Part shown: positions 15,298 to 29,753 of the stretch, in pieces
Layout: every line of letters starts with the position of its first letter
Numbering within the stretch: the stretch's first letter is position 1
Sequence record: OZ195934.1
Strand: one strand, 5' to 3'
Length of the DNA stretch: 64,000 nt
Position numbers and translations under genes: made by a program
Notes under the pieces: generated by a model
Database searches by the model: none
Seen by the model: the letters and a program-made list of their open reading frames with translations, nothing else
Told to the model about the DNA's origin: nothing

Positions 15298-16731
15298 TTA
15301 TAAAGCGTATCGGTCGACACCGACAGTCTTCAGCATGATTTTCACTGGCTCAAGCTCACCACCCAACAGCGACGTTAGAATTGAAGGGCTGCAACCCGAC
15401 ACTAACGCTGTGTTCGCTTCACCTGATTTAACAGGCACGTTGTCTAGACGACCACGCAAGTTCCAGAACACTAGTTGCGGCATTTCGTAGCCCGCGTTCG
15501 CATACATGACTTTGATTGCATCGAAGTTCGTAGTGTTACGAGTATGCCAGCCACCGCCAGTACGAGCTTGATCGAATTCCATATCGCTCATGATAAGCAA
15601 TTTGGTTGGCATTTCGTCTTGCGACAAGTTTGCCGTACGAGCGCGTTCAAGAAGAACTTCGAAGCATCGTGTGATGTTCGTGCTCATATCTTCGCCAGAT
15701 CGTTGCATGTTGTCAAGACGCGACTTCAAGCTATCACCCGTCAACTTGTGAAAGTGCGGATCACTTGAGAACGAAATGAATTGATCTTTGAAGATACCCT
15801 CATTACGTTCAGCGACGTAGATGCCAAGAGACATCGCAACTTCTTTACAAGTCACACTACCACCGTGTTCACCGTTGATACCACAGCCCATAGAGCCAGA
15901 AACATCAACAACTGGAATCACGCGCTCGTCAGAGCCTTCCATGTAGTTCGGTAGAGCTTTCCATTGCTCATTTGCAACACGATGGTCACCCATTTTAACG
16001 CTGCGAACAACATCGTACGGGTAAACAGCACCTGCATTGATCTTCGCTTCACCTTTCACAAGCGATGTGATGTACTCACCGTATGCAGATTCAGCGTTAC
16101 GACCGAATGCTTTCTGATAGCGTGCAGACGCTACAGATGGCAGTTTGCCGAACTCGATCTCGTCCCAATTACGAGCACACATCTTCTGTTCAACAGTGTC
16201 AGACAAAAGAGAGATCACTTTACGCCACTGCTTCGCGTTTACACCAACCGACTTGATTGTGCGCTTGAACACGATAGCGTTTTTGCTGCGCTCACGAGGA
16301 AACCACTTAGCAGCAAGCGCGTTTTTGTCATTGACAATCGCGTGTGTCCACAGAGTGATAGCATCAGCTTCAAGAGAAGTACCGAACGCAGATACTAAGT
16401 CATCGAAACGACCAAGTTCTGGGATCTTGCGCATAACTAGACGCGCCACTTCTGGTTGTTCTTTACACAGACGTGCAAAGATTTTGCGGAAAGTACCGCG
16501 CTCACCTGCACCGCCACGCACGTCGCGAGACCATAGCAAGATGCGAGTTGCAAGCTCAGGGTTTTCACCGAATGCGCGATTAAACGCAGTTAGTGACTGA
16601 TCATTACCGCGCATAGCGCCGATAGTGAAGAACAAGTTTAGACACTCGTTACCCGAAGTGCTGTGTGTTACTGCACCGTTTGCTGTACGTGAATCGTTAG
16701 ATTGCATAGCGTTCATAAATAAACTAGTCAT
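15298..16731 (-). CDS. DUF2828-family TROVE/Ro60-like helical protein with C-terminal vWA domain
   Basis: RDVRGGAGER, GRFDDL, LAAKWFPRE, VVDVSGSM (MIDAS), SDMEFD, FWNLR; start re-assigned to ATG 16731 after SD GGAG. Confidence 0.85.
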   Translation of the reverse strand: MTSLFMNAMQSNDSRTANGAVTHSTSGNECLNLFFTIGAMRGNDQSLTAFNRAFGENPELATRILLWSRDVRGGAGERGTFRKIFARLCKEQPEVARLVMRKIPELGRFDDLVSAFGTSLEADAITLWTHAIVNDKNALAAKWFPRERSKNAIVFKRTIKSVGVNAKQWRKVISLLSDTVEQKMCARNWDEIEFGKLPSVASARYQKAFGRNAESAYGEYITSLVKGEAKINAGAVYPYDVVRSVKMGDHRVANEQWKALPNYMEGSDERVIPVVDVSGSMGCGINGEHGGSVTCKEVAMSLGIYVAERNEGIFKDQFISFSSDPHFHKLTGDSLKSRLDNMQRSGEDMSTNITRCFEVLLERARTANLSQDEMPTKLLIMSDMEFDQARTGGGWHTRNTTNFDAIKVMYANAGYEMPQLVFWNLRGRLDNVPVKSGEANTALVSGCSPSILTSLLGGELEPVKIMLKTVGVDRYAL

Positions 16732-16767
16732 TGCTGTAAGCTCCAAATATCAAGGATCAGAAAAATA

Positions 16768-17358
16768 ATGTTTCATATTGTATATCAAATAACAAATTTA
16801 ATAAACAACAAAATTTACGTCGGTAAGCATTCAACCGAAAACATTCATGACGAATACATGGGTTCGGGAAAGCTTTTGCTCAGAGCCATTAAAAAGTATG
16901 GCAAGGAGAATTTCACAAAAGACATACTGTTCGTATCATTAGACGAAAAGGATGCATATAAAGCAGAACATGAGATCGTGAATGAAGATTTTGTTCTCCG
17001 TGAAGACACATATAATCTCAAAGTTGGCGGTCTTGGTGGATCATCAGGAATAGAATCTCCATGCAAAGGTCGTCAACTGAGTGAAGATACTAAACTAAAA
17101 ATGAGAAAAAGTAAACAATTTTCTCAAAAACATTTAGATTATCTCTCAACTAAATTATCTGAGTACAACAAATCTAGACAAGGTGTTCAAAGAGACGATC
17201 TAAAGGGTAACTCAAACCCAATGCATCGAGGTAATTGGCATACACCCCACGGAATATTTGAAACATCAAGCGAAGCAGCGTGTGCCATAAAATGTAGTCA
17301 ATCAACAATTGTTAGACGTTGCAAAAATCCAAATTTTGAGGATTGGTACATCAAATAA
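16768..17358 (+). mobile_element. Free-standing GIY-YIG homing endonuclease (Seg-like), antisense insertion
   Basis: IVYQITNLINNKIYVGKH, YMGSG, F.K.IL...E, YNLKVGG, C-terminal HTH; AT-rich. Confidence 0.85.
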
Positions 17359-17667
17359 CTATCGTTGTCTGTGCAACGATGTGCCATTCTTATGAATTTC
17401 GATCAGAATCGTGCCGCCAGTTTCGTAGTTCGTACGAACAGAACGATAGTCGTATTTCTCAAAGAAGTTGCGAATAATAGTCGCACCTTTCTTATCAGTA
17501 TCGGTAAGATGCACATCAACTTTGATGCGAATCGGGAAATCTGCGTTATTCTTGACAGCCGCCATGAATTCGCGTTCGCACTGCTTAGTGTAGTGCTCAG
17601 AAAGAACGCGACGTTCTTCTAGCACTCGCTCTTCGATGTTTTTACGTAGCTCGTCATGTTTAATCAT
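17359..17667 (-). CDS. Hypothetical protein
   Basis: ORF in early operon, start at MIKHDEL. Confidence 0.7.
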   Translation of the reverse strand: MIKHDELRKNIEERVLEERRVLSEHYTKQCEREFMAAVKNNADFPIRIKVDVHLTDTDKKGATIIRNFFEKYDYRSVRTNYETGGTILIEIHKNGTSLHRQR

Positions 17668-17669
17668 AA

Positions 17670-17996
17670 TTAAGAACCGTGATTTTTGTTGATAGTTAGT
17701 GTAACGTATGAATACGAACAAGAATTGTATTCACGCGGGTCAGAATCAGTGCGACCGAACTCGGCAGTGAAGTTATTAAACCCCTCTTTGCGCATAAGCT
17801 CTTTGATGATCGTCATGAACTGCGAGTTTGCTTCTGTTTGACTCTTCAATGTCACTTGAACAGTCACAGGAAACGCATAGCCATTCACTGAGTTGATTCG
17901 TTTCTCGAACGATTTGCGCATATCGCGACCAAACTCTTCCATGCGAGTCGTCTTGTTGTTCTCAACGCGTTCGACTAGTTGTTCGTATAAACTCAT
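17670..17996 (-). CDS. Hypothetical protein, possible paralogue of 17359..17667
   Basis: ORF, start at MSLYEQL. Confidence 0.7.
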   Translation of the reverse strand: MSLYEQLVERVENNKTTRMEEFGRDMRKSFEKRINSVNGYAFPVTVQVTLKSQTEANSQFMTIIKELMRKEGFNNFTAEFGRTDSDPREYNSCSYSYVTLTINKNHGS

Positions 17997-17997
17997 A

Positions 17998-18297
17998 TTA
18001 CACCCCAAGAACATTTGGCAATTGCGAAATGGTATATGTGCTTTCTTGCACACGACCGCGAAACTTCACAAGCATACGATGACTGAAGTCGTCTGGGTGC
18101 TCATCTAAAAGATCAGCATACTTCCACAAGCCACATTCATTGCGCATACTCTGACCGATTGAGTGATGATACACTGCTAAATCAGATTCATCAGCAAGAA
18201 ACGCTTCACGATGCTCTTTCGGAGTATCTTGCCAGATGCCTTTTAACCAACGCTGACAGTGCGCTTCTAAGATCTTTTTAACAATTGCAGTTTTCAT
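17998..18297 (-). CDS. Hypothetical protein (DUF6794-like)
   Basis: G..MRN..GLW and HPDDFS motifs. Confidence 0.55.
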   Translation of the reverse strand: MKTAIVKKILEAHCQRWLKGIWQDTPKEHREAFLADESDLAVYHHSIGQSMRNECGLWKYADLLDEHPDDFSHRMLVKFRGRVQESTYTISQLPNVLGV

Positions 18298-18662
18298 TGA
18301 TAGTCCTTAATGTCGTTGTCGAAGTGACGAATGCACGAGCTATCAAGTCTCGGGCGATCATCGTCTTCAGTGATTGATGGTAGTGTGTAATTATCGTTGA
18401 ACGGCTGACCGCTTGCTTTAGCGATTTCGTACGCGTCTGCACGATTGAAATACTCACCACAATAGTTGATGAAACCTTGCCCGCGATCACCGAGTTCTTT
18501 TCGATGTTCGATTGTACAGCCCGCTTTCTTCAGTGCTTTCATTACACCAGACATGTTGCGACCGAAGTGACAGCTATCAGCTATCACAAGTTCTTCAGTC
18601 GAACCATCGGGGTATGTTACGCGTATCGCGTTTGCAGCAGCAGAAATAATGTTTACGTGCAT
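18294..18662 (-). CDS. Conserved phage hypothetical protein
   Basis: QGFINYCGEYFNRADAYEIA pattern common in phage ORFs. Confidence 0.7.
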   Translation of the reverse strand: MHVNIISAAANAIRVTYPDGSTEELVIADSCHFGRNMSGVMKALKKAGCTIEHRKELGDRGQGFINYCGEYFNRADAYEIAKASGQPFNDNYTLPSITEDDDRPRLDSSCIRHFDNDIKDYQ

Positions 18663-20952: not shown

Positions 20953-20979
20953 AAAAAAACCCGCCTAAAGAGGCGGGTT
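20953..20979 (-). terminator. Terminator ending the RNA-array transcript
   Basis: AACCCGCC-TCTTTA-GGCGGGTTTTTTT. Confidence 0.85.
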
Positions 20980-20993
20980 CATCGTGCATAAAC

Positions 20994-21184
20994 AGACATT
21001 CGTGAACAGTTTTAAAGTCTTTCGCATTAATCACATTTGACTTTCATGTTTAACGATACATGAATCCCTACCAACAAGTTGATAGTCGTACCTTCGAGTT
21101 TATTGCTTTAAGTCACCGAGAATGCGGCTATGCGTTACTCTATCTCTTATTTAAGTTTTGTTAGTTGGTTGCTGTACAATGTCT
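20994..21184 (-). ncRNA. Y-like structured RNA closed by AGACAUU/AAUGUCU with GUACAGCAA and ACG motif strands
   Basis: End-pairing, internal hairpins CUAUCAAC/GUUGGUAG and UUCAUGU/ACAUGAA, no ORF. Confidence 0.6.
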
Positions 21185-21194
21185 TTGCAAAATT

Positions 21195-21283
21195 TGGCGG
21201 AGATACTGGGAGTCGAACCCAGAGAACGCTATTAACGTCCGACACCTTAGCAGGGTGCTGTCATACCATTAGACCATATCTCC
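21195..21283 (-). tRNA. tRNA-Ser(GCU)
   Basis: Cloverleaf, long variable arm, loop CUGCUAA, CCA encoded. Confidence 0.95.
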
Positions 21284-21420
21284 AGTTCGGAATGCTGCTC
21301 TCATTCTCAACTACATATTTGCTCTTATCGCTGCCGTGTAGTACGAGCTTCGCAGGTTCGCTTTCGATAATTTTAAGAGCAGGGCGACTCATACCAGCTC
21401 TATTCAAGCGAACTTGAATT

Positions 21421-21498
21421 TGGTGCCCAACCCGAGATTCGAACTCGGAACTTCTAGCGTTTGAAACTAGCGACTCTGCCAGATTGGCCTAGTTGGGC
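21421..21498 (-). tRNA. tRNA-Leu(CAA), short variable loop
   Basis: Loop UUCAAAC, A73, CCA. Confidence 0.9.
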
Positions 21499-21504
21499 AA
21501 TGTT

Positions 21505-21581
21505 TGGTACGCGTGGGCGGATTCGAACCGCCATCCCTGAGATTTTAAGCCTCATGCCTCTGCCAATTGGACCACACGCGC
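21505..21581 (-). tRNA. tRNA-Leu(UAA), short variable loop
   Basis: Loop CUUAAAA, CCA. Confidence 0.9.
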
Positions 21582-21583
21582 AT

Positions 21584-21657
21584 TGGAGCTCGTACACAGA
21601 ATCGAACTGTGACCAAGTGATTTGCAATCACTTATACTACCGTTATACGATACGAGC
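21584..21657 (-). tRNA. tRNA-Cys(GCA)
   Basis: Loop UUGCAAA, U73, CCA. Confidence 0.95.
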
Positions 21658-21667
21658 AAATGTACTT

Positions 21668-21744
21668 TGGGGTGACAGACGGGGACCGAACCCGCATTTT
21701 CCGGAATCACAACCCGGAGGTATTTCCACTTCACCCACTGCCAC
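21668..21744 (-). tRNA. tRNA-His(GUG)
   Basis: Loop UUGUGAU, C73, CCA; atypical T loop; flanked by 10-bp inverted repeat tgtactttgg/ccaaagtaca. Confidence 0.85.
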
Positions 21745-21815
21745 ACCAAAGTACACTCTGGGACATATAACGTTTATCAACCGGACTCATTTACGTGGGT
21801 CATTCGAGCAAAGCA

Positions 21816-22061
21816 CTACTTTGCTAGTAAGTTTTCTTTCTTGAGATATATACTATCACTTGAGAGTTCGCGAGTAAACATATTTCTGAAATAAATTTGC
21901 ACATCGTCTTCAGTCGTGTTCGACTCAATTTTCTGCGCTAATTCGAGAATTTTGCTTCGCTTGTATCCCTTTCGCCAACAGTCAAACATCAGTTTGTCCA
22001 TTTCTTTCAGTTTTTCGACCTGATTCGGGTGTACATATTCGCGTGTTTCAAGTAATGACAT
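21816..22061 (-). CDS. Hypothetical protein within tRNA array
   Basis: ORF; start moved downstream of tRNA-Val. Confidence 0.6.
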   Translation of the reverse strand: MSLLETREYVHPNQVEKLKEMDKLMFDCWRKGYKRSKILELAQKIESNTTEDDVQIYFRNMFTRELSSDSIYLKKENLLAK

Positions 22062-22081
22062 AGTATATTGCTCATAAAGAA

Positions 22082-22156
22082 TGGTAGTCCCTGAGAATTT
22101 CGAAATCTCGACCTTCGCCATGTAAAAGCGGTGCTCTGCCTCTGAGCTAAGGGACT
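22082..22156 (-). tRNA. tRNA-Val(UAC)
   Basis: Loop UUUACAU, CCA. Confidence 0.9.
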
Positions 22157-22161
22157 ATAAT

Positions 22162-22237
22162 TGGAACGTGTAACGAGATTCGAACTCGTACCTTCGGTTT
22201 GGAAGACCGTAATGCTACCGTTAAACACCATACACGC
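22162..22237 (-). tRNA. tRNA-Gly(UCC)
   Basis: Loop CUUCCAA, U73, CCA. Confidence 0.95.
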
Positions 22238-22770: not shown

Positions 22771-23060
22771 AGACAATAACGAAGTGTTTTTTCGTCTTTT
22801 ACATAAATCGCAGTTGACTATCTTGTTACTCTAACAAGCAAGTATCGACTACCTCAGCGTCGCGCCTAGACTGTGTATTTCTACACGCCACATCTTTCGT
22901 TACAAGTCTCGACCTAGCACGTTGTTGCTGTGCTGAACGTCTCGAACCCACGCTAAGACCTAATCATTGTTTTAGTAGATTAGTAGTTTGGTTGCTGCAT
23001 ATTGTCTTACGTGACAGTCAAACACACAATGCCGAAACAATATGCCGAGACGTTCACGCT
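22771..23060 (-). ncRNA. Large structured RNA with two CAGCAA motifs
   Basis: AGACAAUA/UAUUGUCU, GAACGUCUCG/CGAGACGUUC and UCUUAGCGU/ACGCUGAGG long-range helices. Confidence 0.55.
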
Positions 23061-23102
23061 CTTATTTTTCAAGTTCACACTATCGTAGTGACTCTCGTGA
23101 TA

Positions 23103-23178
23103 TGGCATCCCCAGAAAGATTTGAACTTTCAACCCCGAATTTAGAAGATTCGTGCTCTTCCAATTGAGCTATGAGGAC
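23103..23178 (-). tRNA. tRNA-Arg(UCU)
   Basis: Loop CUUCUAA, CCA. Confidence 0.95.
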
Positions 23179-23254
23179 ATCAATAAGATTCGAACCATAA
23201 GATCTTGTGACACGATGGTAGTAAAGAGAGTGTCTATCTCATGTGTTCGAAATT

Positions 23255-23330
23255 TGGTGGAGCTTGAGGGTTACGATCCCTCTACTTCTCCGTGCAAGGG
23301 AGATGTTTTACCGATTAGCACTAAAGCCCC
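23255..23330 (-). tRNA. tRNA-Ala(UGC)
   Basis: G3-U70, loop CUUGCAC, CCA; atypical T loop. Confidence 0.9.
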
Positions 23331-23337
23331 AAATTGT

Positions 23338-23550
23338 CTATTTTAACTCTGTGACGCCTATATTTTTCCAATCAAACAGACCATCGACATCTTCAAGCGA
23401 TTCGCCAGTCACGTCTGCAATATAAGCAGCGACTTTCGATTCGATTTCGTCATTACTTAGAGACTCATCAACAGTGAAAATCTCTTCGTTGTTATTACCA
23501 CCGAATGTGCCGTTAATGTCGTATTCACACCAAACTGATATGTATTTCAT
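23338..23550 (-). CDS. Hypothetical acidic protein, 70 aa
   Basis: ORF with SD GAG. Confidence 0.7.
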   Translation of the reverse strand: MKYISVWCEYDINGTFGGNNNEEIFTVDESLSNDEIESKVAAYIADVTGESLEDVDGLFDWKNIGVTELK

Positions 23551-23575
23551 AATGTCTCACAAAGTTAATAAAATA

Positions 23576-23650
23576 TGGTGCTCCCGGACAGACTCGAACT
23601 GCCATAACCTGATTACAAAACAGGGATAATCGCCTTTATATTACGGGAGC
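23576..23650 (-). tRNA. tRNA-Thr(UGU)
   Basis: Loop UUUGUAA, CCA. Confidence 0.9.
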
Positions 23651-23656
23651 GAAACT

Positions 23657-23766
23657 GAGTGTCGTTTATACCGCGTCTCCAAGACCTGAGATACCAACTC
23701 AGCATGGGATTCGAACCCACCGACGTTTCTTGTATCGAAAGAAATTTTAAATTGCTGTAAACACTC
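23657..23766 (-). ncRNA. Circularly permuted tRNA-mimic (YrlA-like architecture), 110 nt
   Basis: Ends GAGUGU/ACACUC; order: motif strand, anticodon-like hairpin, T arm GUGGG-UUCGAAU-CCCAU, capped acceptor hairpin, D-like hairpin, motif partner strand. Confidence 0.7.
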
Positions 23767-23775
23767 TTAGTATTT

Positions 23776-23849
23776 TGGCTGGGGATAACGGACTCGAACC
23801 GATACTGCGAAAGTCAAAGTTTCGTATGCTGCCATTACATCAATCCCCT
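23776..23849 (-). tRNA. tRNA-Gln(UUG)
   Basis: Loop CUUUGAC, weak 1-72 pair, G73, CCA. Confidence 0.9.
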
Positions 23850-23857
23850 ATTGTTCT

Positions 23858-24082
23858 TTAGCGACTCGAATTGATCTCATCGATCATTCGTTTAGCTAGT
23901 TTCGTAGCTAGTGCTTTATCAGCATCGCCAGTTGTTTCTATGTCGTATGCAATTTTACTCACATACTTTGAGTCTAGCGCACCCGCTGATTGTTTAGACC
24001 AGTGATCCTTGACTTTCTGATATTTCGTCATGTCAATCGAATCTTTTGTCGCTTCACCCAAAAATTCTGCTAATGTTTTCAT
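23858..24082 (-). CDS. Probable internal (head-packaged) protein
   Basis: N-terminus MKTLAEFLGE resembles T4 capsid-targeting sequence; TATAAATA at 24112-24119. Confidence 0.65.
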   Translation of the reverse strand: MKTLAEFLGEATKDSIDMTKYQKVKDHWSKQSAGALDSKYVSKIAYDIETTGDADKALATKLAKRMIDEINSSR

Positions 24083-24111
24083 ATCTCTATTCTTATTAAA
24101 GTGTAAAAACA

Positions 24112-24119
24112 TATTTATA
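24112..24119 (-). promoter_or_regulatory. T4 late promoter TATAAATA
   Basis: Exact consensus 30 nt upstream of ATG 24082. Confidence 0.75.
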
Positions 24120-24122
24120 TGC

Positions 24123-24271
24123 AAGATAACATACACGACGGCGTAAGTAGTCGTTCTTATGTTTAGACTAGAAATCCACGTCACATCATTAATGCTATAA
24201 TTGCGCCACTCTCTACTATGAATATGTTATGCATTATTCATGCAGACTCTTCTTGCGCTGTAAATTATCTT
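24123..24271 (-). ncRNA. Y-like RNA closed by AAGAUAA/UUAUCUU with UUUACAGCGCAA motif variant
   Basis: End-pairing plus motif directly after 5' helix. Confidence 0.45.
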
Positions 24272-24347
24272 TGGCGGAACTGACGGGGCTCGAACCCGCT
24301 TCCTTCTCCGTGACAGGGAGGTATGCACCCAGTTACACCTCAGCTCC
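24272..24347 (-). tRNA. tRNA-Asp(GUC)
   Basis: Loop CUGUCAC, G73, CCA. Confidence 0.95.
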
Positions 24348-24445
24348 CCAAAGATAACTCTTTGTATTAAGACACTGTAATCGTTTGGTTTTTTCTTCAA
24401 ATAAAAAATACTGGTTTGTTTGCAGAATGATTACTATCTTAAATC

Positions 24446-24521
24446 TGGCAGGGACACTCAGATTCGAACTGAGACCAACGGGTTTGGAATCCGTCATGCT
24501 GCCATTAAACACCATGTCCCT
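24446..24521 (-). tRNA. tRNA-Trp(CCA)
   Basis: Loop UUCCAAA, G73, CCA. Confidence 0.95.
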
Positions 24522-24569
24522 ATTGCGTATGAGGTGGCTTAAATCAGTGGCCACTCTCACGCTAAAATT

Positions 24570-24644
24570 TGGTACTCACGAAGAGAATCGAACTCTTATC
24601 TGACGGTTATCAGCCGTCTGCTTTACCGTTAAGCTACGCGAGTA
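24570..24644 (-). tRNA. tRNA-Ile(GAU)
   Basis: Loop CUGAUAA, CCA. Confidence 0.95.
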
Positions 24645-24708
24645 AAGTACGCTCGAAAGCGCACAATGTTAATCGGTTAAGTGACTAGCTCGACCAATGT
24701 AACATATT

Positions 24709-24801
24709 TGGAGGAAGATAACGGAGTCGAACCGTCACCGCGCTACTAACGCAATGGGCTGGTTTTCAAGACCAGTTGCGAACCACATCGCCCTATCTTC
24801 C
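24709..24801 (-). tRNA. tRNA-Ser(UGA)
   Basis: Loop CUUGAAA, long variable arm, CCA. Confidence 0.9.
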
Positions 24802-24806
24802 TTTAA

Positions 24807-25055
24807 TTACTTATGTCGTCCCCAATACATCTTATCAAAGCTGTTTAGGTATTCTTCGACTTTAGCTACATCAGCCGCACTAACAACCCATTCGTTGTCT
24901 TGAGTCGTGCGTTTATTCGCAGGAACTGCTTTAGCGCCTAATTTAGCCATTGTGTTTCTGTGTCGTTCGCGATCCATTGATCCACTAAAAAGTGAGCCAG
25001 ATACGCCGTACGTAACGTCCGTTGCTTCTGCAAGAAACTCTTGTAAAGTTTTCAT
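24807..25055 (-). CDS. Probable internal (head-packaged) protein
   Basis: N-terminus MKTLQEFLAE nearly identical to T4 IP capsid-targeting sequence; CTAAATA upstream. Confidence 0.65.
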   Translation of the reverse strand: MKTLQEFLAEATDVTYGVSGSLFSGSMDRERHRNTMAKLGAKAVPANKRTTQDNEWVVSAADVAKVEEYLNSFDKMYWGRHK

Positions 25056-25099
25056 GTTTTCCACCATTGTCTTAAAACAATATTTAGACGTTTAAAAAT

Positions 25100-25176
25100 T
25101 GGATGCGTGGGAGTGGATTCGAACCACTGACCTCCGGCTTATGAGACCGACGAGCTGACCGCTGCTCTACCCCGCA
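25100..25176 (-). tRNA. tRNA-fMet-like (CAU)
   Basis: 5' UGCGGGGUAGAGCAG..AGCUCGUCGG resembles initiator tRNA; extra A bulge in acceptor 3' strand. Confidence 0.8.
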
Positions 25177-25180
25177 ATTA

Positions 25181-25366
25181 TTACTTACTGAACTGCACTA
25201 CACAAGTATCTGATTGATACACTATCGTGCCAGTTGCTTCCGCGTCTATTTGAACGATGCAGCCATTTGCCCCATCTTCACCGCGTGATGCTACATCTTT
25301 AATCGAAATGCCACTTGAACAAGCTGTCAATGACAGTGCAAGTGCTAATGCTGCTATTGCTTTCAT
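25181..25366 (-). CDS. Small lipoprotein, 61 aa
   Basis: MKAIAALALALSLTAC lipobox; SD AAGGTG. Confidence 0.75.
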   Translation of the reverse strand: MKAIAALALALSLTACSSGISIKDVASRGEDGANGCIVQIDAEATGTIVYQSDTCVVQFSK

Positions 25367-25382
25367 GATGTTCACCTTAATT

Positions 25383-25469
25383 TGGTGGTTCGCCTAGGAC
25401 TCGAACCTAGAAGCCCGTTCAAGGGCGAGGGATTTACAATCCCCTGACTTACCATTAGTCTAACGAACC
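25383..25469 (-). tRNA. tRNA-Tyr(GUA)
   Basis: Loop UUGUAAA, long variable arm, CCA. Confidence 0.95.
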
Positions 25470-25475
25470 AGAATT

Positions 25476-25549
25476 TGGTACTCCGTACGGGAGTCGAACC
25501 CGTCCCTTTAGATTGAAAGTCTAACGATCTACCAATAATCTAACGGAGC
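25476..25549 (-). tRNA. tRNA-Glu(UUC)
   Basis: Loop CUUUCAA, CCA. Confidence 0.95.
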
Positions 25550-25673
25550 ATTGAAAAATTATTTATTAGCAAACTAGCAAGTTATCTGAGATAATCATTT
25601 AACGGGCCCAGCTAGTAAACTAATAGATAATTTCTCATCTAGAGATAGTTTAGTGACTTCTCAACGGTCAATT

Positions 25674-25748
25674 TGGTGCGTCGCCTGAGATTCGAACTCA
25701 GACTTTTCTGGTTAAAAGCCAGATGTACTACCATTATACGAACGACGC
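25674..25748 (-). tRNA. tRNA-Lys(UUU)
   Basis: Loop CUUUUAA, CCA. Confidence 0.95.
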
Positions 25749-25754
25749 ATTAAC

Positions 25755-25829
25755 TGGTGCACCCTCTCGGAATCGAACCGAGCACTGTGGGACTTCACTC
25801 CACCGCTTTTCCTGATAAGCTAAGGGTAC
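25755..25829 (-). tRNA. tRNA-Phe(GAA), atypical anticodon loop
   Basis: Loop GUGAAGU, CCA. Confidence 0.8.
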
Positions 25830-25835
25830 TTTATT

Positions 25836-25910
25836 TGGCGGACGTGGAGAATTTCGAAATCTCGACCCCGGTGTTAACAGCACCGCGCTCTGCCTCTGAG
25901 CTACACATCC
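25836..25910 (-). tRNA. tRNA-Asn(GUU)
   Basis: Loop CUGUUAA, G73, CCA. Confidence 0.95.
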
Positions 25911-25915
25911 AAATT

Positions 25916-25992
25916 TGGTACGCAGAGAGAGATTCGAACTCTCAACTCCTAGTTTCTAAGACTAGCGGCTCTGCCAATTGGCCTACCTGCGC
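25916..25992 (-). tRNA. tRNA-Leu(UAG), short variable loop
   Basis: Loop CUUAGAA, CCA. Confidence 0.9.
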
Positions 25993-26005
25993 ACTGTGTA
26001 AATAA

Positions 26006-26080
26006 TGGTCGGAGTAGAAGAATTCGAATCTTCACCGCTCGGCCCCAAACCGACTATGCTGCCATTAACACCATACTCCG
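26006..26080 (-). tRNA. tRNA-Pro(UGG)
   Basis: C1-G72, loop UUUGGGG, CCA. Confidence 0.95.
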
Positions 26081-26109
26081 AAAAACTTTTGTAGAACTTC
26101 GTTCTTACA

Positions 26110-26230
26110 TTGTACATGATGTTTTCTTCGTTGTAAACATCTTTTTTGAAAAACTTTTCGTTCGTTTTCGAACGTTTAAATGCTTTTCTCTATTGTACAT
26201 GATGTTTTCGTCATTGTAAACATCTTTTTT
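26110..26230 (-). promoter_or_regulatory. Tandem duplicated T4-type early promoters driving the tRNA array
   Basis: Two near-identical copies of AAAAAAGAT-GTTTACA-17 nt-TACAAT (about 26110-26147 and 26193-26230). Confidence 0.8.
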
Positions 26231-26378
26231 AAATCTTTTTGAATGACTTAACGTTTTTGTTTTAACACGTTAATCATATCACTCGTTTACGACTCGTTAA
26301 ACACTTATTTGTGAATAATTTCGTTAAATTCTATCATCGCGACAGTAGATAACGAGACACGGTCCTAAACGTATCGTT

Positions 26379-26454
26379 TGGCACTCGATATAAGATTCGA
26401 ACTTATAACCTGCGCCTTCGTAGGACGCTGCTCTTCCAATTGAGCTAATCGAGC
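26379..26454 (-). tRNA. tRNA-Arg(ACG)
   Basis: Loop CUACGAA, CCA. Confidence 0.95.
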
Positions 26455-26536
26455 ATTAAAGCTTGTTTGCTTTCTTTGTTTATCATACTCTGCTTTGAAA
26501 GCATGTTAAACAAAGAATTTCAGTTTATTTCGCCCA

Positions 26537-26562
26537 TAAAAAAGGACGCTAATCTGCGTCCT
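26537..26562 (-). terminator. Intrinsic terminator
   Basis: GAGGACGC-AGATTA-GCGTCCTTTTTT. Confidence 0.8.
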
Positions 26563-26591
26563 CAAGTATACTTCTATGTTATACTTTCGGA

Positions 26592-26708
26592 CTACATTCG
26601 TGGATCCCATTTCTGGTTGCCAAACGTCGGATTCGCCAGATATACCGATACTGAGCTAAAGCGCATTTCGCTTCGTAAAATCTCAATATGTGTATTAGAA
26701 TGTGGCAT
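26592..26708 (-). CDS. Putative 38-aa leader peptide
   Basis: AAGAGAG SD; MPHSNTHIEILRSEMRFSSVSVYLANPTFGNQKWDPRM*. Confidence 0.35.
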   Translation of the reverse strand: MPHSNTHIEILRSEMRFSSVSVYLANPTFGNQKWDPRM

Positions 26709-26823
26709 CGTGGCTCTCTTTTCGAACGTAAAAATTGTTGTTTTGTTTTTTCTATAATTGTACTTATAAGACTAAAATCGAGGTTTCGTGCGTTTTTTGC
26801 AAAAAACCTCGAAAAAAGTGAAA

Positions 26824-27063
26824 TTATTTTTTAAAGTGCTTTCTTTTATTGCACTCAGCTAAGATTTCATTGTCATAATGATTCTGAAGCTGCTTGAATT
26901 TCTTGTGCTGATCTGGCGTTAGCTCATTCTCATCACGAAGATTTTTCAAGAACCCAAGAGGTTTACGAAACGACTTGCGATACGAGTCTAAACGCTGATC
27001 AGTCAAACCGACTAGTTGTTTAGGCGTTAGCAATGTCTTATTAATGTCAAAGTTCTTACTCAT
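26824..27063 (-). CDS. Hypothetical basic protein, 79 aa
   Basis: SD AGGGG, ORF. Confidence 0.7.
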   Translation of the reverse strand: MSKNFDINKTLLTPKQLVGLTDQRLDSYRKSFRKPLGFLKNLRDENELTPDQHKKFKQLQNHYDNEILAECNKRKHFKK

Positions 27064-27085
27064 GTGTTACCCCTTGTATTGAAAT

Positions 27086-27200
27086 TGGCTGACCGATGCG
27101 GGACTCGAACCCACGACCACGTGCTTAACAGGCAATTAGAAATGCGGTAGCGATACTTATCAATATCATTTACGTGCTCTACCACTGAGCTAATCGGTCA
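27086..27200 (-). ncRNA. tRNA-Asn(GUU)-shaped RNA with 38-nt insertion in the anticodon stem
   Basis: Deleting 27134-27171 restores stem CGUGC/GCACG and loop CUGUUAA; 8-bp acceptor; G73-CCA. Confidence 0.75.
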
Positions 27201-27205
27201 ATTGT

Positions 27206-27449
27206 TTAGTTCGCTTTTGCAGTGCACCGAGCCACCTCAGAATTGATACATTTCGTTTGACGCGCATTCGGATGGTTACGCTTTGCGTCGTGAGTCTGTC
27301 AGCGATGCATGGCATACACACACCCCGTTTCTCACCTACTCTGCCCTACAGACGTTATCTGCTTGGTTAACAATTGCACTCGCATTAGGTATAACATGTC
27401 ACCGTCATCTTCCGGACGATTTCAGTGTATGCACTCAAAAGCGAACTAA
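27206..27449 (-). ncRNA. About 245-nt structured RNA closed by a long helix
   Basis: UUAGUUCGCUUUUG-AGUGCA / UGCAC-UGCAAAAGCGAACUAA plus internal hairpins; no credible minus-strand ORF. Confidence 0.6.
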
Positions 27450-27462
27450 TGTTGATTCTATT

Positions 27463-28011
27463 CTACTTCTCTCGCAATGTAAACAGCAGATTGCGATAAT
27501 CGAAGTTTCGTTTGTTCTTTGTATTGTAGAAGCTAGTCCAGTCGATTGCAACGGGACAATTCTTACTACCGACACGAGCAATGAATATCTCGTGTGTCGC
27601 GCTGTGCTTCGCGTTATAAGCTCTTACTCGTTTTTCATAGTGAGCTATGTATTCTGCACAAGCAGCGTTGTAATCAGCTCTAGAGAACGTCTTACCTTTC
27701 ATAAAGCGTGCATCAAGATACGGACGAATAACCCGAACGCGTTCTCCCGACCATGCCATATTAAAGCTGTTTTCAATTTCACCTAGAATTTGACCAGTCT
27801 TTAAGTTACGGCTCAGTATGACCCAACAGCGTGTACGACGATAGTCTTCAAAACGCATCACCTTAATGTGTGCATTAATGAATTCATCGCGTTTAGCGTT
27901 GCACTCAATGCGTGCTGCACGACGCTGTTCTTCAGTCATCGACTCTCGAACTTCTTTCGGATACAATGTAGCAAAGCGTTTCGGGCAATCTGCCATCGTT
28001 AGCTTTTTCAT
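27463..28011 (-). CDS. Hypothetical protein, 182 aa
   Basis: SD GAGG, coupled to upstream ORF. Confidence 0.75.
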   Translation of the reverse strand: MKKLTMADCPKRFATLYPKEVRESMTEEQRRAARIECNAKRDEFINAHIKVMRFEDYRRTRCWVILSRNLKTGQILGEIENSFNMAWSGERVRVIRPYLDARFMKGKTFSRADYNAACAEYIAHYEKRVRAYNAKHSATHEIFIARVGSKNCPVAIDWTSFYNTKNKRNFDYRNLLFTLREK

Positions 28012-28218
28012 ATCATACCTCTCTTGCGTTTAAGTTGCGAACGCTCAATTTGATTGAAGACTTGCTTATCTTTTGCTTTATTGCGTCGAGAATTACCCCA
28101 ACGACTTCCAGCACATACACCAAAGCGGTCTTTTTTAAGCTTCTTAGCTAACCACAATGGTACTTCGACACGAGCACGTAAGTAGTGCTTTGCGATGTCT
28201 TTATAAGTCTTGCCCATG
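28008..28218 (-). CDS. Small basic hypothetical protein (MGKTYKD...)
   Basis: SD AGAGG; start moved to ATG 28218. Confidence 0.7.
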
Positions 28219-28230
28219 ATAATTTCCTCT

Positions 28231-28471
28231 TGTTGCCGCTCCGTGGAATCGAACCACGTCAAACACAACACCTCGTCAGCCCAATAAGAGTTTCGAAGTA
28301 AGAGCTTACTAGCACATTAAAGCACGGGGCATTATTTCTCTCAAGCAGTTTTCGACCACCGCGTGAGCTTTCTTATCCCCAGTCCCAGTGATTCAGAACG
28401 AAACATGATAGCGAGTCATGAGTTGAACTAATGTTGGGAAAACACTGCGTATTGTACACCGAGTAAGCGGC
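28231..28471 (-). ncRNA. About 240-nt RNA with tRNA-like acceptor stem and T arm (tmRNA-like topology, non-Ala acceptor)
   Basis: 5' GCCGCUU pairs with 3' GAGCGGC after T arm CGUGG-UUCGAUU-CCACG; internal GCAGUGUUUUC/GAAAACUGC helix. Confidence 0.6.
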
Positions 28472-28485
28472 ATTGTTAATAAACT

Positions 28486-28605
28486 TGGTGCCCTACGTGA
28501 ACGTTGAACGTTTTTCTACTTAGCTTCCATCTACCTCACTCAACGAAGAGCTATAGATTCCGTCAAGGTCTACTTCCACTTGACTAAGCGATTCAAACGT
28601 AGGAC
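28486..28605 (-). ncRNA. 120-nt CCA-ending RNA with acceptor-like stem but no cloverleaf
   Basis: GUCCUACG/CGUAGGGC-A-CCA; no T or anticodon arm. Confidence 0.65.
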
Positions 28606-28644
28606 ATATTTTGAAAGTAGTCTCGTAAAACTACTTTGAGAATA

Positions 28645-28722
28645 TGGTGACCCTCGTGGGACTCGAACCCAACTATCTTTCGGTTATGAGCCGACTGCTT
28701 TTACCAGTTAAGCTAAAGGGCC
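28645..28722 (-). tRNA. tRNA with CAU anticodon, Ile2 (lysidine)-like
   Basis: GGCCC.. acceptor and loop CUCAUAA resemble bacterial tRNA-Ile2. Confidence 0.8.
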
Positions 28723-29089: not shown

Positions 29090-29105
29090 TGTTCACCTCT
29101 TAAAA

Positions 29106-29228
29106 TGGTGGAGAGTGCGGGATTCGAACCACGCGGCCAAAAGATTTACTTAGTTAGTGTTTGCAGCATGAATACTTGACAATATTCTGTCAACGTTCTT
29201 TTGCTCTACCAGACTGAGCTAACTCTCC
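29106..29228 (-). ncRNA. tRNA-shaped RNA with about 50-nt domain replacing the anticodon loop
   Basis: Normal acceptor, D and T arms plus CCA; AAAGA/UCUUU stem encloses ACG-hairpin-GUAUUCAUGCUGCAA. Confidence 0.75.
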
Positions 29229-29234
29229 ATTTAA

Positions 29235-29374
29235 AACACATTGAGCAGGGTGCAGGATTCGAACCTGCGTCACGATCTTAGAATGATATGCTGTTTGGGT
29301 TGCTGAATACAAGCTATACAACTTGCGTTTATGCTACGTGTGCTAGCCACTACACCAACCCTGCTCAATGTGTT
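29235..29374 (-). ncRNA. tRNA-shaped RNA with 49-nt motif insertion in anticodon stem, flanked by 17-bp helix
   Basis: D arm GGUGUAGUGGCUAGCAC, T arm GCAGG-UUCGAAU-CCUGC, insert carries UAUUCAGCAACC. Confidence 0.75.
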
Positions 29375-29419
29375 CTAGTGCAATGCCATATGAACTCACA
29401 TGGCATCACTGAACCTGTT

Positions 29420-29584
29420 TTATATTGCCTTAGCTAACCAACACAATCTGAAATCGTGCGCTTTAATAAAGGGAGGGCGTCCCTCTTCGCCAGTTAGCAT
29501 AGATGTGTTGCTATGCACCCATTTGTCAATCATGTCCAAGGCAAACAGAACAATGAATACGAGTGCGAGAAGATATACAATCAA
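29420..29584 (-). CDS. Small membrane protein, 54 aa (TTG start)
   Basis: SD GAGGTG; MIVYLLALVFIVLFALDMIDK... hydrophobic N-terminus; not in ORF track. Confidence 0.5.
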   Translation of the reverse strand: MIVYLLALVFIVLFALDMIDKWVHSNTSMLTGEEGRPPFIKAHDFRLCWLAKAI

Positions 29585-29607
29585 ATTGAAACACCTCGCT
29601 AAAAAGT

Positions 29608-29753
29608 TAGAGCATATTGGTCGTGCGTACTAGAATCGAACTAGTCCTACGATCTCCTAATGATATGCGTTATTGGTTGCTGAATACTTACTTGTCAGTA
29701 AGCGTTATGCTACGTGTGCTGCCACTACACCAACGCACGACCAATATGCTCTA
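29608..29753 (-). ncRNA. Paralogue of 29235..29374 with 48-nt insertion, flanked by 21-bp helix, CCA encoded
   Basis: Same conserved insert, compensatory changes in all helices. Confidence 0.75.

What the first reader, a model, noticed from the sequence alone, without database searches (positions are those of the whole stretch)
15298..29753. Candidate undescribed system: DUF2828 (Ro60/TROVE-like) protein plus a family of motif-sharing Y-like and tRNA-mimic RNAs
Seen in sequence (minus strand): at least 8 non-coding elements in the tRNA array share one bipartite element, an ACG (or similar) bulge on one side of a short helix and U(U/A)CAGCAA or UAUUCAGCAA on the other. It occurs in two topologies. 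(a) The helix closes the RNA's own 5' and 3' ends: 20994-21184, 22771-23007, 23657-23766, 24123-24271. (b) The helix is a hairpin grafted into the anticodon arm of a tRNA-shaped RNA: 29106-29228, 29235-29374, 29608-29753 and a variant at 27086-27200. The helix sequences differ completely (GAGUGU/ACACUC, AGACAUU/AAUGUCU, CAAGUU/AGCUUG, CUUACU/AGUAAG, UUGACA/UGUCAA) while the flanking motif is kept, which is the pattern expected of a protein-binding RNA structure. The same motif lies in the translation-initiation region of the DUF2828 gene. Established: Ro60/Rsr (TROVE + vWA) binds a bulged helix of Y RNAs, and bacterial YrlA RNAs are tRNA mimics. I know of no defined RNA ligand for DUF2828. Inference: this is a phage RNP system that loads or tethers tRNA mimics, for example as decoys for host anticodon nucleases or as adaptors for RNA repair or decay.
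Basis: partly seen in the sequence, partly recalled or inferred. Interest (0 to 1): 0.96.

Follow-up and report, generated by a model that had tools for sequence, protein, structure and literature searches.

The report
Phage Ro60-like protein with Y-like RNAs
This Vibrio phage, like many unrelated phages, encodes a Ro60-shaped protein next to a set of small structured RNAs, some of them tRNA mimics, that all carry one conserved "helix + CAGCAA" element. It looks like an undescribed branch of the Ro/Y-RNA particles, and a relative of the protein is already reported to counter a bacterial defence.

Summary
The window is a KVP40-like Vibrio phage. The gene at 15298-16731(-) (Pfam DUF2828+DUF7788) gives an AlphaFold model that matches Ro60 over its full length.

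Seven listed RNAs (a1, a2, a3, b1, b2, b3, b4) are conserved in related phages, and I found one unlisted RNA at 24373-24437. All carry one module: an A-rich strand, a 6-8 bp helix of free sequence, about 3 nt, then C(A/U)GCA(A/C). The outer end of the helix is either the RNA's own termini or a tetraloop inside the anticodon arm of a tRNA-shaped RNA. The eighth listed element, a4, is doubtful.

A covariance model built from other phages found 127 matches in about 1.6 Mb around DUF2828 genes.
- All 127 lie on the gene's strand, mostly within 600 nt of it.
- All 7 helix pairs show compensatory changes.
- The phage T5 tRNA and stable-RNA region gave no match.

One RNA per phage is a permuted tRNA mimic like bacterial YrlA. 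Small copies of the module sit on the gene's own ribosome-binding region in several lineages.

Best reading: a divergent Ro60/Y-RNA particle with a new recognition motif. Binding and function are inferred, not shown. Rfam 15 holds no matching family and I found no paper defining these RNAs. One preprint shows that the Bas63 homologue counters the Ppl defence.

The parts
15298..16731 (-). Gene for the Ro60-like protein (477 aa): N-terminal helical-repeat part (Pfam DUF2828) and C-terminal vWA-like part (DUF7788), with MIDAS motif DVSGS at residues 276-280.
   Evidence: Pfam hits. AlphaFold model, pLDDT 77. Foldseek to Ro60 structures 9l5y, 9kop, 1yvr, 2i91 at E 6e-7 to 5e-6, TM 0.54-0.60. Start codon and MIDAS motif.
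16729..16744 (-). Translation start region: GGAG, then CUUACAGCA-AUG. The CAGCAA string overlaps the start codon. No convincing flanking helix in this phage.
   Evidence: Sister phages ValKK3, VS2, F86 and locus L028 have a full module enclosing the ribosome-binding site and the AUG (R1 24.3 bits / R2 29.9 bits). Other lineages have 37-41 nt modules just 5' of the ribosome-binding site.
20991..21186 (-). a1: large Y-like RNA (about 190 nt). Terminal helix AGACAUU/AAUGUCU, then GUA-CAGCAA, with G after the helix. Last RNA of the array.
   Evidence: R2 23.8 bits, E 7e-4. Conserved in F86, VH1, ValKK3 and VS2.
20957..20980 (-). Terminator-like hairpin followed by a T run, directly after a1.
   Evidence: Consensus scan only.
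22768..23009 (-). a2: large Y-like RNA (about 240 nt), paralogue of a1. Helix AGACAAUA/UAUUGUCU, then UG-CAGCAA.
   Evidence: R2 14.3 bits, E 0.14. Conserved in all KVP40-like phages. The F86 helix AGGCAAU/AUUGCCU shows a compensatory change. Its 5' end resembles the E. coli phage JH2 RNA at L017 13354-13407.
23653..23769 (-). a3: permuted tRNA mimic. Terminal helix, then UUA-CAGCAA, a hairpin, a T-arm and two further hairpins. Same order of arms as YrlA.
   Evidence: R2 31.0 bits, E 1e-5. Alignment A2 shows covariation in the T-arm and one hairpin. Rfam YrlA scores only 12.3 bits.
24123..24271 (-). a4: doubtful, divergent member. Helix AAGAUAA/UUAUCUU with CAGCGCAA.
   Evidence: Conserved only in F86, with one compensatory pair. 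Not found by R2. No A-rich 3' flank.
24373..24437 (-). Helix GUAAUC/GAUUAC, then AUU-CUGCAA, with A-rich AAACG before the 3' arm.
   Evidence: R1 26.3 bits. R2 39.3 bits, E 1e-7. F86 orthologue at L002 11113-11180, 36.9 bits.
27086..27200 (-). b4: tRNA-shaped RNA with a hairpin insert in the anticodon arm. The motif is degenerate here (CCGCAU).
   Evidence: Rfam tRNA 49.1 bits. Orthologues carry CAGCAC. R3 23.3 bits, but its orthologues were in the seed. Annotated 'tRNA-OTHER' in phage 6E35.1a.
29106..29228 (-). b1: tRNA with a 7-bp acceptor stem, an encoded CCA end, and a module (AAAA-helix-AUG-CUGCAA) in place of the anticodon loop.
   Evidence: Rfam tRNA 49.8 bits. GCAUUCAUGCUGCAAAC is nearly invariant in five phages (ValKK3 has G for the final A). 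R3 gives 18.3 bits here and 21-26 bits for orthologues outside the seed. The same architecture occurs in Aeromonas phage AsFcp_1 and viral contig L083.
29235..29374 (-). b2: tRNA-shaped RNA with an acceptor stem of about 17 bp, D arm, stem GUAGC/GCAAC enclosing AUAAAC-[7-bp hairpin]-AUU-CAGCAA, long variable arm and T arm.
   Evidence: Alignment A1 and RNAalifold: 14 pairs with compensatory changes. R3 47.4 bits, seed member.
29608..29753 (-). b3: paralogue of b2, with an acceptor stem of about 20 bp.
21195..28722 (-). Array of 26 ordinary tRNA genes in which the Y-like RNAs are embedded.
   Evidence: ARAGORN. Rfam.
14724..15248 (-). RNase H-like (PF04308 / DUF458) gene directly downstream of the Ro60-like gene. 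This pairing is seen only in the KVP40-like phages.
   Evidence: Synteny.

Best explanation
This is a phage version of the Ro60/Y-RNA particle, built from a divergent Ro60 homologue (the DUF2828+DUF7788 protein) and its own family of Y-like RNAs.

Shown: the RNAs are encoded on the same strand, in or beside the phage tRNA array, and share one module. An A-rich single strand (about AAAAAC) enters a 6-8 bp helix of arbitrary sequence. The other strand leaves the helix through about 3 nt (often UUA or AUU) into an almost invariant C(A/U)GCA(A/C).

Inferred: the ring protein recognises this junction, as Ro60 recognises the conserved stem of Y RNAs.

The far end of the helix can be the RNA's own 5'/3' termini. 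This is so for the short 45-110 nt RNAs, for a YrlA-like permuted tRNA mimic (a3), and for two large RNAs (a1, a2). Alternatively a tetraloop closes it, so that the module sits where the anticodon loop of a complete tRNA body would be (b1 with a CCA end; b2 and b3 with a long acceptor stem; b4).

Inferred: the RNAs therefore tether tRNA-shaped or other RNA bodies to the protein, or control access to its central hole. Copies of the module on the gene's own ribosome-binding region would let the protein repress its own translation.

Weakest step, by analogy with the Bas63 homologue: the particle serves counter-defence or RNA surveillance during infection.
For: Protein:
- Full-length fold match to Ro60 structures.
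- The MIDAS motif is conserved.

RNA family:
- Model R1 was built from 10 RNAs of six unrelated phages. It found 26 matches (E<0.01) in 449 kb of 16 annotated phage loci, all on the DUF2828 strand and all in intergenic or tRNA-array DNA.
- In 80 independent IMG/VR loci, R1 found 57 matches, all on the gene's strand. 53 of the 57 lie within 600 nt of the ORF, a zone that is 5.2% of the search space. 49 of the 80 loci have a match.
- Model R2 gave 92 of 92 matches on the gene's strand, 4 more in Bas63, and 31 of 31 in 29 metagenome-assembled-genome contigs from many phyla.
- The helix is paired in 99.4% of cells. All 7 pairs show compensatory changes. The covariation score is 0.99, against 0.21 for shuffles (0 of 500 reach it) and 0.09-0.20 for slid partners.
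- CAGCAA is 97-100% conserved, and the G after the helix is 100% conserved.

Y-RNA likeness:
- The LeBron RNA next to its 'Ro-like' gene aligns to the whole tRNA-like domain of Rfam YrlA (39.8 bits).
- a3, JH2 13921-14045 and Aeromonas 5002-5108 have the same layout.

Autoregulation: modules lie at or on the ribosome-binding site in at least five lineages.

Control: the T5 tRNA and stable-RNA region plus 9 unrelated contigs gave no match.

Function: Bas63 gp130 belongs to this protein family and counters Ppl (PMC11482910).
Against: - No binding, expression or processing data exist. Everything rests on linkage and analogy.
- There is no sequence-level match to TROVE or Ro60.
- The Ro-binding motif of known Y RNAs (GGUCCGA / GNCGAA) is absent.
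- Rfam YrlA does not reach its gathering score (12 and 40 bits against 69).
- gp130 alone protected T7 from Ppl, so the RNAs are not needed for that activity.
- About 30 of the 80 IMG/VR loci gave no match within 6 kb.
- In this window the start region lacks the helix, and b4 has lost the motif.
- The model-made alignments lean towards the model's helix.
Confidence: 0.6

Rival explanations
1. The RNAs work with the DUF2828 protein but are bound at the module by some other factor, such as a host exoribonuclease (PNPase, for example), RNase P, the CCA-adding enzyme or another phage protein. The genetic linkage would then reflect a shared pathway rather than direct contact at CAGCAA.
For: - In known Ro particles the Y RNA also binds partners such as PNPase (PMC4201824; PMC12135203).
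- The tRNA-like bodies should attract tRNA enzymes.
- gp130 acts without the RNAs in T7.
Against: - DUF2828 is the only neighbour conserved across all clades.
- The module sits on the DUF2828 mRNA leader itself, which points to the gene's own product.
- The motif is conserved in hosts as different as Mycobacterium, Listeria and Vibrio, so a single host factor would have to be universal.
Confidence: 0.15
2. The elements are processing or stability signals of the tRNA-array transcript (nuclease entry or stop sites), not ligands of a dedicated protein.
For: - They lie between tRNAs in several phages.
- The outer helix end AG...CUG with an invariant following G looks like a defined cleavage context.
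- M. smegmatis YrlA is cut by RNase P (PMC4201824).
Against: - In the Staphylococcus and Fusobacterium phages, in LeBron and in most metagenomic loci the RNAs flank the DUF2828 gene with no tRNA beside them.
- The T5 tRNA array has none.
- Conserved single strands plus a free-sequence helix, and copies inside tRNA anticodon arms, do not fit a simple cleavage site.
Confidence: 0.1
3. They are purely cis-acting leader or trailer elements that control expression of the DUF2828 gene, for example attenuators.
For: 53 of the 57 IMG/VR matches lie within 600 nt of the ORF. Some overlap its ribosome-binding site.
Against: - Up to four tandem copies occur.
- Copies lie several kb away inside tRNA arrays. 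In this window they are 4-14 kb from the gene.
- Some members contain whole tRNA-like domains or complete tRNAs with CCA.
Confidence: 0.07
4. The tRNA-shaped members (b1, b4) are precursor tRNAs whose inserts are removed to give working tRNAs. The shared motif would then be an excision signal.
For: - b1 and its relatives keep a normal acceptor stem, discriminator base and encoded CCA.
- Rfam scores them as tRNA.
Against: - No 7-nt anticodon loop with U33 can be read after removing the insert.
- No such splicing route is known in bacteria (my own knowledge).
- The same module occurs in RNAs with no tRNA body.
Confidence: 0.05

Closest known systems
Bacterial Ro60 (Rsr) with YrlA/YrlB RNAs (Salmonella, M. 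smegmatis; Chen et al. 2014, PMC4201824; Rfam RF02553)
   Same: - Ring-shaped helical-repeat protein with a vWA domain.
- Several small RNAs encoded beside the gene on the same strand.
- A terminal stem carrying the presumed protein site.
- One RNA with a permuted tRNA-like domain (T-arm, hairpin, D-arm) and one or more shorter RNAs without it.
   Different: - The protein is not detectable as TROVE by sequence. It belongs to Pfam DUF2828/DUF7788.
- The conserved RNA element is A-rich/helix/CAGCAA, not GNCGAAN0-1G.
- Some members are complete, unpermuted tRNAs with the module in the anticodon arm.
- The set sits in phage tRNA arrays.
- Copies of the module lie on the gene's own leader.
Thermus phage phiLo Ro60 with Yrl1/Yrl2 (PMC12135203; PDB 9L5Y, 9KOP)
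   Same: - A phage-encoded Ro60 with adjacent Y-like RNAs.
- It is the best structural match to the model.
- It has been proposed to exploit host PNPase for counter-defence.
   Different: phiLo Ro60 is a recognised Ro60 homologue whose RNAs carry the CGAA motif. No tRNA-embedded forms or leader operators are reported for it.
Bas63 gp130 (Felixounavirus; PhageMaP preprint PMC11482910)
   Same: - Same protein family (DUF2828+DUF7788) and same position at the head of a tRNA array.
- Four CAGCAA RNAs follow it.
   Different: The preprint gives only the protein phenotype (counter to Ppl) and a guess that some 'tRNAs' are Y RNAs. The RNAs I find lie in the gaps between its annotated tRNAs, and the preprint defines no RNA motif.
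Stable RNAs of unknown function in the phage T5 tRNA region (RNAI, RNAIII, RNA1, RNA2 and others)
   Same: Small stable RNAs, some tRNA-like, interspersed in a phage tRNA array.
   Different: No CAGCAA module. No DUF2828 gene is annotated in the 49 kb examined.

Membership tests
Ro60 / TROVE protein family | Detectable sequence homology to the TROVE domain (Pfam PF05731) or to solved Ro60 proteins | tested here: not met
   Pfam gives only DUF2828 and DUF7788. phmmer and a profile search of PDB sequences find no Ro60.
Ro60 / TROVE protein family | Fold: helical-repeat (HEAT) part followed by a vWA domain, superposable on Ro60 over the full length | tested here: met
   The AlphaFold model (pLDDT 77, pTM 0.76) matches 9l5y, 9kop, 1yvr, 2i91, 1yvp, 9nfa and 9nep. 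E values run from 6e-7 to 2e-5, TM 0.54-0.60, over 510-560 aligned columns. Ring closure was not inspected.
Ro60 / TROVE protein family | MIDAS motif (DxSxS...T...D) in the vWA domain | tested here: met
   DVSGS at 276-280. D, S, S, a downstream T and a downstream D are invariant in 26 homologues.
Y RNA (general) | Small RNA encoded next to the Ro gene on the same strand, closed by a stem of its 5' and 3' ends that carries a conserved element | tested here: met
   The RNA ends themselves are inferred, not mapped.
Y RNA (general) | Bound by the Ro60 protein | not testable with these tools
   Needs pull-down or gel-shift experiments.
Y RNA (general) | Known Ro-binding sequence (GGUCCGA with bulged helix, or GNCGAAN0-1G) | tested here: not met
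   The consensus is UUA-CAGCAA with an A-rich partner strand. The YrlA alignment begins after the CAGCAA.
YrlA (Rfam RF02553) | Score at or above the Rfam gathering threshold (69 bits) | tested here: not met
   Window a3 scores 12.3 bits. LeBron RNA B scores 39.8 bits. The 28-bit hit at 29170-29296 is an artefact that spans two adjacent tRNA-like RNAs.
YrlA (Rfam RF02553) | Permuted tRNA-like domain: T-arm, closed hairpin, D-like arm, enclosed by the terminal stem | tested here: met
   a3 and its orthologues. LeBron 16519-16640, JH2 13921-14045 and Aeromonas 5002-5108.
tRNA (for b1, b4) | Cloverleaf with a 7-nt anticodon loop | tested here: not met
   Acceptor, D and T arms are present and the Rfam tRNA score is 49-50 bits. 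A 40-50 nt insert replaces the anticodon loop, and ARAGORN does not call them.

The most novel reading that the evidence does not exclude
The helix+CAGCAA junction is a portable tag for a phage Ro-like ring. Phages would graft it onto different RNA bodies: whole tRNAs with CCA ends, permuted tRNA mimics, larger RNAs and the ring's own mRNA. The resulting family of particles would present tRNA-shaped bait or adaptors to host enzymes and defence nucleases. That would make the DUF2828 particle a general RNA-guided counter-defence hub shared by many large phages that carry tRNA arrays.
Probability: 0.25. Interest if true: 0.92.

Novelty: new variant of a known kind. Interest (0 to 1): 0.8.

Why it matters
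- DUF2828 proteins are very common. 711 phage records in the collection searched have one, and the protein database holds thousands of clusters. They occur in well-used phages such as Felix O1 relatives, Listeria A511/P100 relatives, KVP40 and mycobacteriophage cluster L.
- One member is already an experimentally supported counter-defence factor.
- A defined RNA partner family with a clear motif turns "what does the phage Ro-like protein bind and do?" into a directly testable question.
- It explains many unannotated gaps and mis-called "tRNA-OTHER" or small-ORF annotations in phage tRNA arrays.
- It supplies a natural example of one protein-binding module used in circularly permuted contexts, which is useful for understanding how Ro-type rings read RNA.
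- It could be added to Rfam.

Tried and rejected
1. Counting the bare motif or a loose helix+motif descriptor gave too many chance hits to be informative. A stricter descriptor gave 79 hits against about 38 expected.
2. An exact-pattern scan of IMG/VR for the b2/b3 core found only one true relative, a KVP40-like contig, and nine coding-sequence coincidences.
3. MAFFT alignment of 13-14 short RNAs mis-registered the 3' helix arm for three of them. I dropped these from the seed.
4. The Rfam YrlA hit at 29170-29296 is an artefact that spans the 3' half of b2 and the 5' half of b1.
5. The neighbouring gene annotated 'RNA ligase/2H phosphoesterase' in relatives looked like an RNA-repair link. It is Acb1, an anti-CBASS enzyme, so I dropped that argument.
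6. Sequence and profile searches against PDB found only armadillo-repeat noise.
7. I considered Hfq binding to the A-rich strand. I rejected it because the motif is kept in mycobacterial and Gram-positive phages (the host argument rests on my own knowledge).
8. Literature searches for DUF2828, Ro-like, Ro60-like, YrlA+phage and tRNA-array ncRNAs found no description of these RNAs.

Full report
WHAT THE WINDOW IS. The region is 100% identical to Vibrio phage D483 and its close relatives. These are roughly 254-kb KVP40-like myoviruses of the family Straboviridae. All genes discussed lie on the minus strand. ARAGORN finds 26 tRNA genes between 21195 and 28722. The Rfam tRNA model also hits two over-long elements, at 29109-29228 and 27090-27199. 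No other Rfam 15 family reaches its gathering score anywhere in the window.

THE PROTEIN.
- The ORF at 15298-16746 matches Pfam DUF7788 (E 2.8e-46) and DUF2828 (E 4e-26). Its real start is the AUG at 16731, giving 477 aa that begin MTSLFMNAMQ.
- Sequence and profile searches against solved structures find no Ro60.
- An AlphaFold model built on 26 homologues (pLDDT 77, pTM 0.76) is a helical-repeat domain followed by an alpha/beta domain.
- Foldseek places that model on Ro60 over its full length. Matches include Thermus phage phiLo Ro60 (9l5y, E 6e-7) and Xenopus Ro60 (1yvr, 2i91, 1yvp), with TM 0.54-0.60. The next-best hits are only vWA domains.
- The MIDAS signature DVSGS...T...D is invariant in the family.
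- Homologues occur in 711 phage records from very different hosts, and some mycobacteriophage entries already call it 'Ro-like RNA binding protein'.

THE RNAS IN THE WINDOW: HAIRPIN FORM.
- b2 (29235-29374) and b3 (29608-29753) are paralogues with orthologues in F86, ValKK3, VH1, VS2 and an IMG/VR contig.
- RNAalifold gives an acceptor stem of 17-20 bp, a D arm, a five-position stem GUAGC/GCAAC with a central A-A mismatch, a long variable arm and a T arm. Fourteen pairs show compensatory changes.
- Inside the short stem lies AUAAAC, then a 7-bp hairpin with a tetraloop, then AUU-CAGCAA. The hairpin sequence changes (GCUUACU/AGUAAGU, GCAAGUU/AGCUUGU, GCAAGCU/AGUUUGU) while the flanks do not.
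- b1 (29106-29228) is a tRNA with a 7-bp acceptor stem, discriminator A and an encoded CCA. Its anticodon loop is replaced by a roughly 50-nt insert, and GCAUUCAUGCUGCAAAC is nearly invariant in five phages (ValKK3 has G for the final A).
- b4 (27086-27200) is a similar tRNA-shaped RNA. Its orthologues have CAGCAC after the hairpin, but this window has CCGCAU.

THE RNAS IN THE WINDOW: TERMINAL-HELIX FORM.
- a3 (23657-23766) is conserved in four relatives. It has an invariant terminal helix, UU(A/U)CAGCAA, a covarying T-arm and a covarying second hairpin.
- Its order of elements is terminal stem, T-arm, hairpin, hairpin. That is the permuted tRNA layout of YrlA, although Rfam YrlA scores it at only 12 bits.
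- a1 and a2 are paralogous large RNAs kept in all KVP40-like phages. In F86 the a2 helix changes from AGACAAU/AUUGUCU to AGGCAAU/AUUGCCU.
- a4 is kept only in F86, carries CAGCGCAA and lacks the A-rich flank. I treat it as doubtful.

THE SAME MODULE IN UNRELATED PHAGES. Reading the DNA beside DUF2828 genes elsewhere showed the same pattern, usually in two to four tandem copies. One larger copy in each phage often contains a T-arm.
- E. coli phage JH2 (Felixounavirus): four copies in the tRNA array that starts 165 nt after the gene.
- Listeria phage A511: three copies just upstream of gp57.
- Campylobacter phage CPX: two copies between the tRNAs and the gene.
- Mycobacteriophage LeBron: three copies in the 360-nt gap after gp53.
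- Aeromonas, Staphylococcus, Fusobacterium, Rhizobium, Bacillus, Pseudomonas and Enterococcus phages.
- The LeBron large copy aligns to the entire tRNA-like domain of Rfam YrlA (39.8 bits, E 1.6e-7 in a 381-nt search, below the 69-bit threshold). The alignment starts after the CAGCAA.

FORMAL TESTS WITH COVARIANCE MODELS.
- Model R1 (61 positions, only the 7-bp terminal helix paired) was built from ten short RNAs of six phages.
- On 16 annotated loci (449 kb, both strands) R1 gave 26 matches at E<0.01. Every one was on the DUF2828 strand and in intergenic or tRNA-array DNA.
- On 80 IMG/VR loci fetched only by protein similarity (888 kb) R1 gave 57 matches at E<=0.05, all on the gene's strand. 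53 lay within 600 nt of the ORF, a zone that is 5.2% of the search space, and 49 of the 80 loci had a match.
- An iterated model, R2, gave 92 of 92 matches on the gene's strand, four more in Bas63, and 31 of 31 in 29 metagenome-assembled-genome contigs from many phyla.
- On 66 distinct sequences the helix is paired in 99.4% of cells, and all seven pairs show compensatory changes. The covariation score is 0.99, against 0.21 for shuffles (0 of 500 reach it) and 0.09-0.20 when partners are slid.
- That alignment was fitted to the model, which favours the helix. The slid controls and the hand-checked seed make the result safe all the same.
- The column profile reads aaAGGwUnc-uUA-CAGCAA-aca...A-rich...c-gnAwCCU-G-nu. 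CAGCAA is 97-100% conserved, and the G after the helix is 100% conserved.
None of the three was in any seed.
- Negative control: the T5 region holding 25 annotated tRNAs and eight stable RNAs of unknown function, plus nine unrelated viral contigs (130 kb in all), gave nothing better than 17.9 bits, E 0.16.

THE HAIRPIN TOPOLOGY ELSEWHERE.
- A 39-nt model, R3, seeded on b2, b3, b4 and two foreign examples finds the b1 orthologues that were not in the seed (21-26 bits; 18.3 bits in the window). It also finds extra copies in ValKK3, Aeromonas AsFcp_1 and contig L083, all on the gene's strand.
- The L083 and Aeromonas examples are complete tRNAs with a 7-bp acceptor stem and CCA, with AAAAAC-[7 bp, GACA or GAGA loop]-AUU/UUA-CAGCA(A/C) in the anticodon arm.
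- So both topologies are real. The hairpin form is rarer in the sample: the KVP40-like phages, one Aeromonas phage and one contig.
- Geometrically the two forms are the same junction. They differ only in whether the far end of the helix is open (the RNA's termini) or closed by a loop.

THE GENE'S OWN LEADER.
- In ValKK3, VS2, F86 and L028 the 5' leader reads GACAUU-UUA-CAGCA(A/U)-...GAGGAAAU...-AUGUC. This puts the ribosome-binding site in the loop and the AUG in the 3' arm.
- Four other lineages carry 37-41 nt modules directly 5' of the ribosome-binding site.
- In this window and in VH1 only GGAGCUUACAGCAAUG is present, without a helix.
- Autoregulation is an inference from position alone.

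LITERATURE.
- Chen et al. 2014 found YrlA next to TROVE-annotated Ro60 in 254 bacteria and 22 phages, with a GNCGAAN0-1G motif (PMC4201824).
- Thermus phage phiLo Ro60 binds two CGAA-motif Y-like RNAs and associates with host PNPase (PMC12135203).
- The PhageMaP preprint reports that Bas63 gp130 is Ro60-like by structure and sits upstream of the tRNAs. It counters the Ppl defence, and does so even when expressed alone from a plasmid or from T7. The authors guess that some Bas63 'tRNAs' are Y RNAs (PMC11482910).
- I confirmed that gp130 is DUF2828+DUF7788. The RNAs lie in the gaps between the annotated tRNAs, not among them.
- No paper in the searchable library defines these RNAs or the motif.

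INTERPRETATION. The best-supported reading is a divergent Ro60/Y-RNA particle.
- Shown: the fold, the RNA family, its covariation, its tight strand-specific linkage to the gene, the two topologies and the YrlA-like layout.
- Inferred: that the protein binds the junction, that the leader copies autoregulate, and that the tRNA bodies act as tethers or bait.
- The counter-defence role is borrowed from one homologue. In that case the RNAs were not required, so they may modulate or broaden the activity rather than constitute it.
- The neighbouring '2H phosphoesterase' is Acb1, not an RNA-repair enzyme.

VERDICT. Novelty: a new variant of a known kind. This is a new, widespread Y-like RNA family with a new recognition motif and an unusual tRNA-embedded form, paired with a Ro60-fold protein family that Pfam lists as domains of unknown function (DUF2828, DUF7788).

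Noticed in passing
window 30408-30863 (-): The gene just upstream of b3, annotated 'RNA ligase / cyclic nucleotide phosphodiesterase' in relatives, is a clear Acb1 anti-CBASS protein (PF23474, E 9.5e-45). A known counter-defence gene therefore sits at the head of the ncRNA/tRNA block.
   Followed up: partly
window 16768-17358 (+): A GIY-YIG (SegE-like) homing endonuclease gene lies on the opposite strand immediately upstream of the Ro60-like gene. It is absent from 6E35.1a and the K-series phages, whose matches cover only 95% of the query, so it looks like a recent mobile insertion.
   Followed up: partly
window 26109-26220 (-), and repeats within 26081-26378: Two near-identical promoter-like units (TTTACA-17-TACAAT, each preceded by 'aaaaagatg') lie in a repeat conserved across KVP40-like phages. 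They are probably tandem promoters for the downstream tRNA block.
   Followed up: no
window 28272-28644, 26455-26823 and 22607-22770 (-): Three further intergenic stretches are conserved at 71-90% identity in related phages, the first two across the KVP40-like phages and the third only in F86 by BLAST. One contains a T-arm-like GUGGUUCGAUUCCAC. None has the CAGCAA module or any Rfam match, so they may be other unannotated structured RNAs.
   Followed up: partly
L108 (Bas63) 27749-28023; L017 (JH2) 13093-13218; L001 and others: Small 'hypothetical protein' ORFs, often on the opposite strand, are annotated over the Y-like RNAs. b1 and b2 are annotated as tRNAs in F86, and b4 as 'tRNA-OTHER' in 6E35.1a. 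These are probably annotation artefacts.
   Followed up: partly
L063 3131-3235, L065 1263-1376, L105 5729-5828, L082 4554-4661, L059 5271-5370: A distinct 100-114 nt subclass of the RNA family shares a conserved interior, GAACCUUUCUGGAGGGGAAAGCAAAAACUCGCCAAAAC, in several metagenomic phages. It is neither the short form nor the tRNA-like form.
   Followed up: no
window 14724-15248 (-): An RNase H-like (PF04308/DUF458) gene always follows the Ro60-like gene in the KVP40-like phages, but not in the other clades examined. It may be a lineage-specific partner.
   Followed up: no
L109 (phage T5) 10285-13950, 20849-21567: The T5 record annotates eight stable RNAs of unknown function, some tRNA-like, in its tRNA region. 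They do not match the CAGCAA models, so they may be a separate, still unexplained class of phage tRNA-array RNAs.
   Followed up: partly
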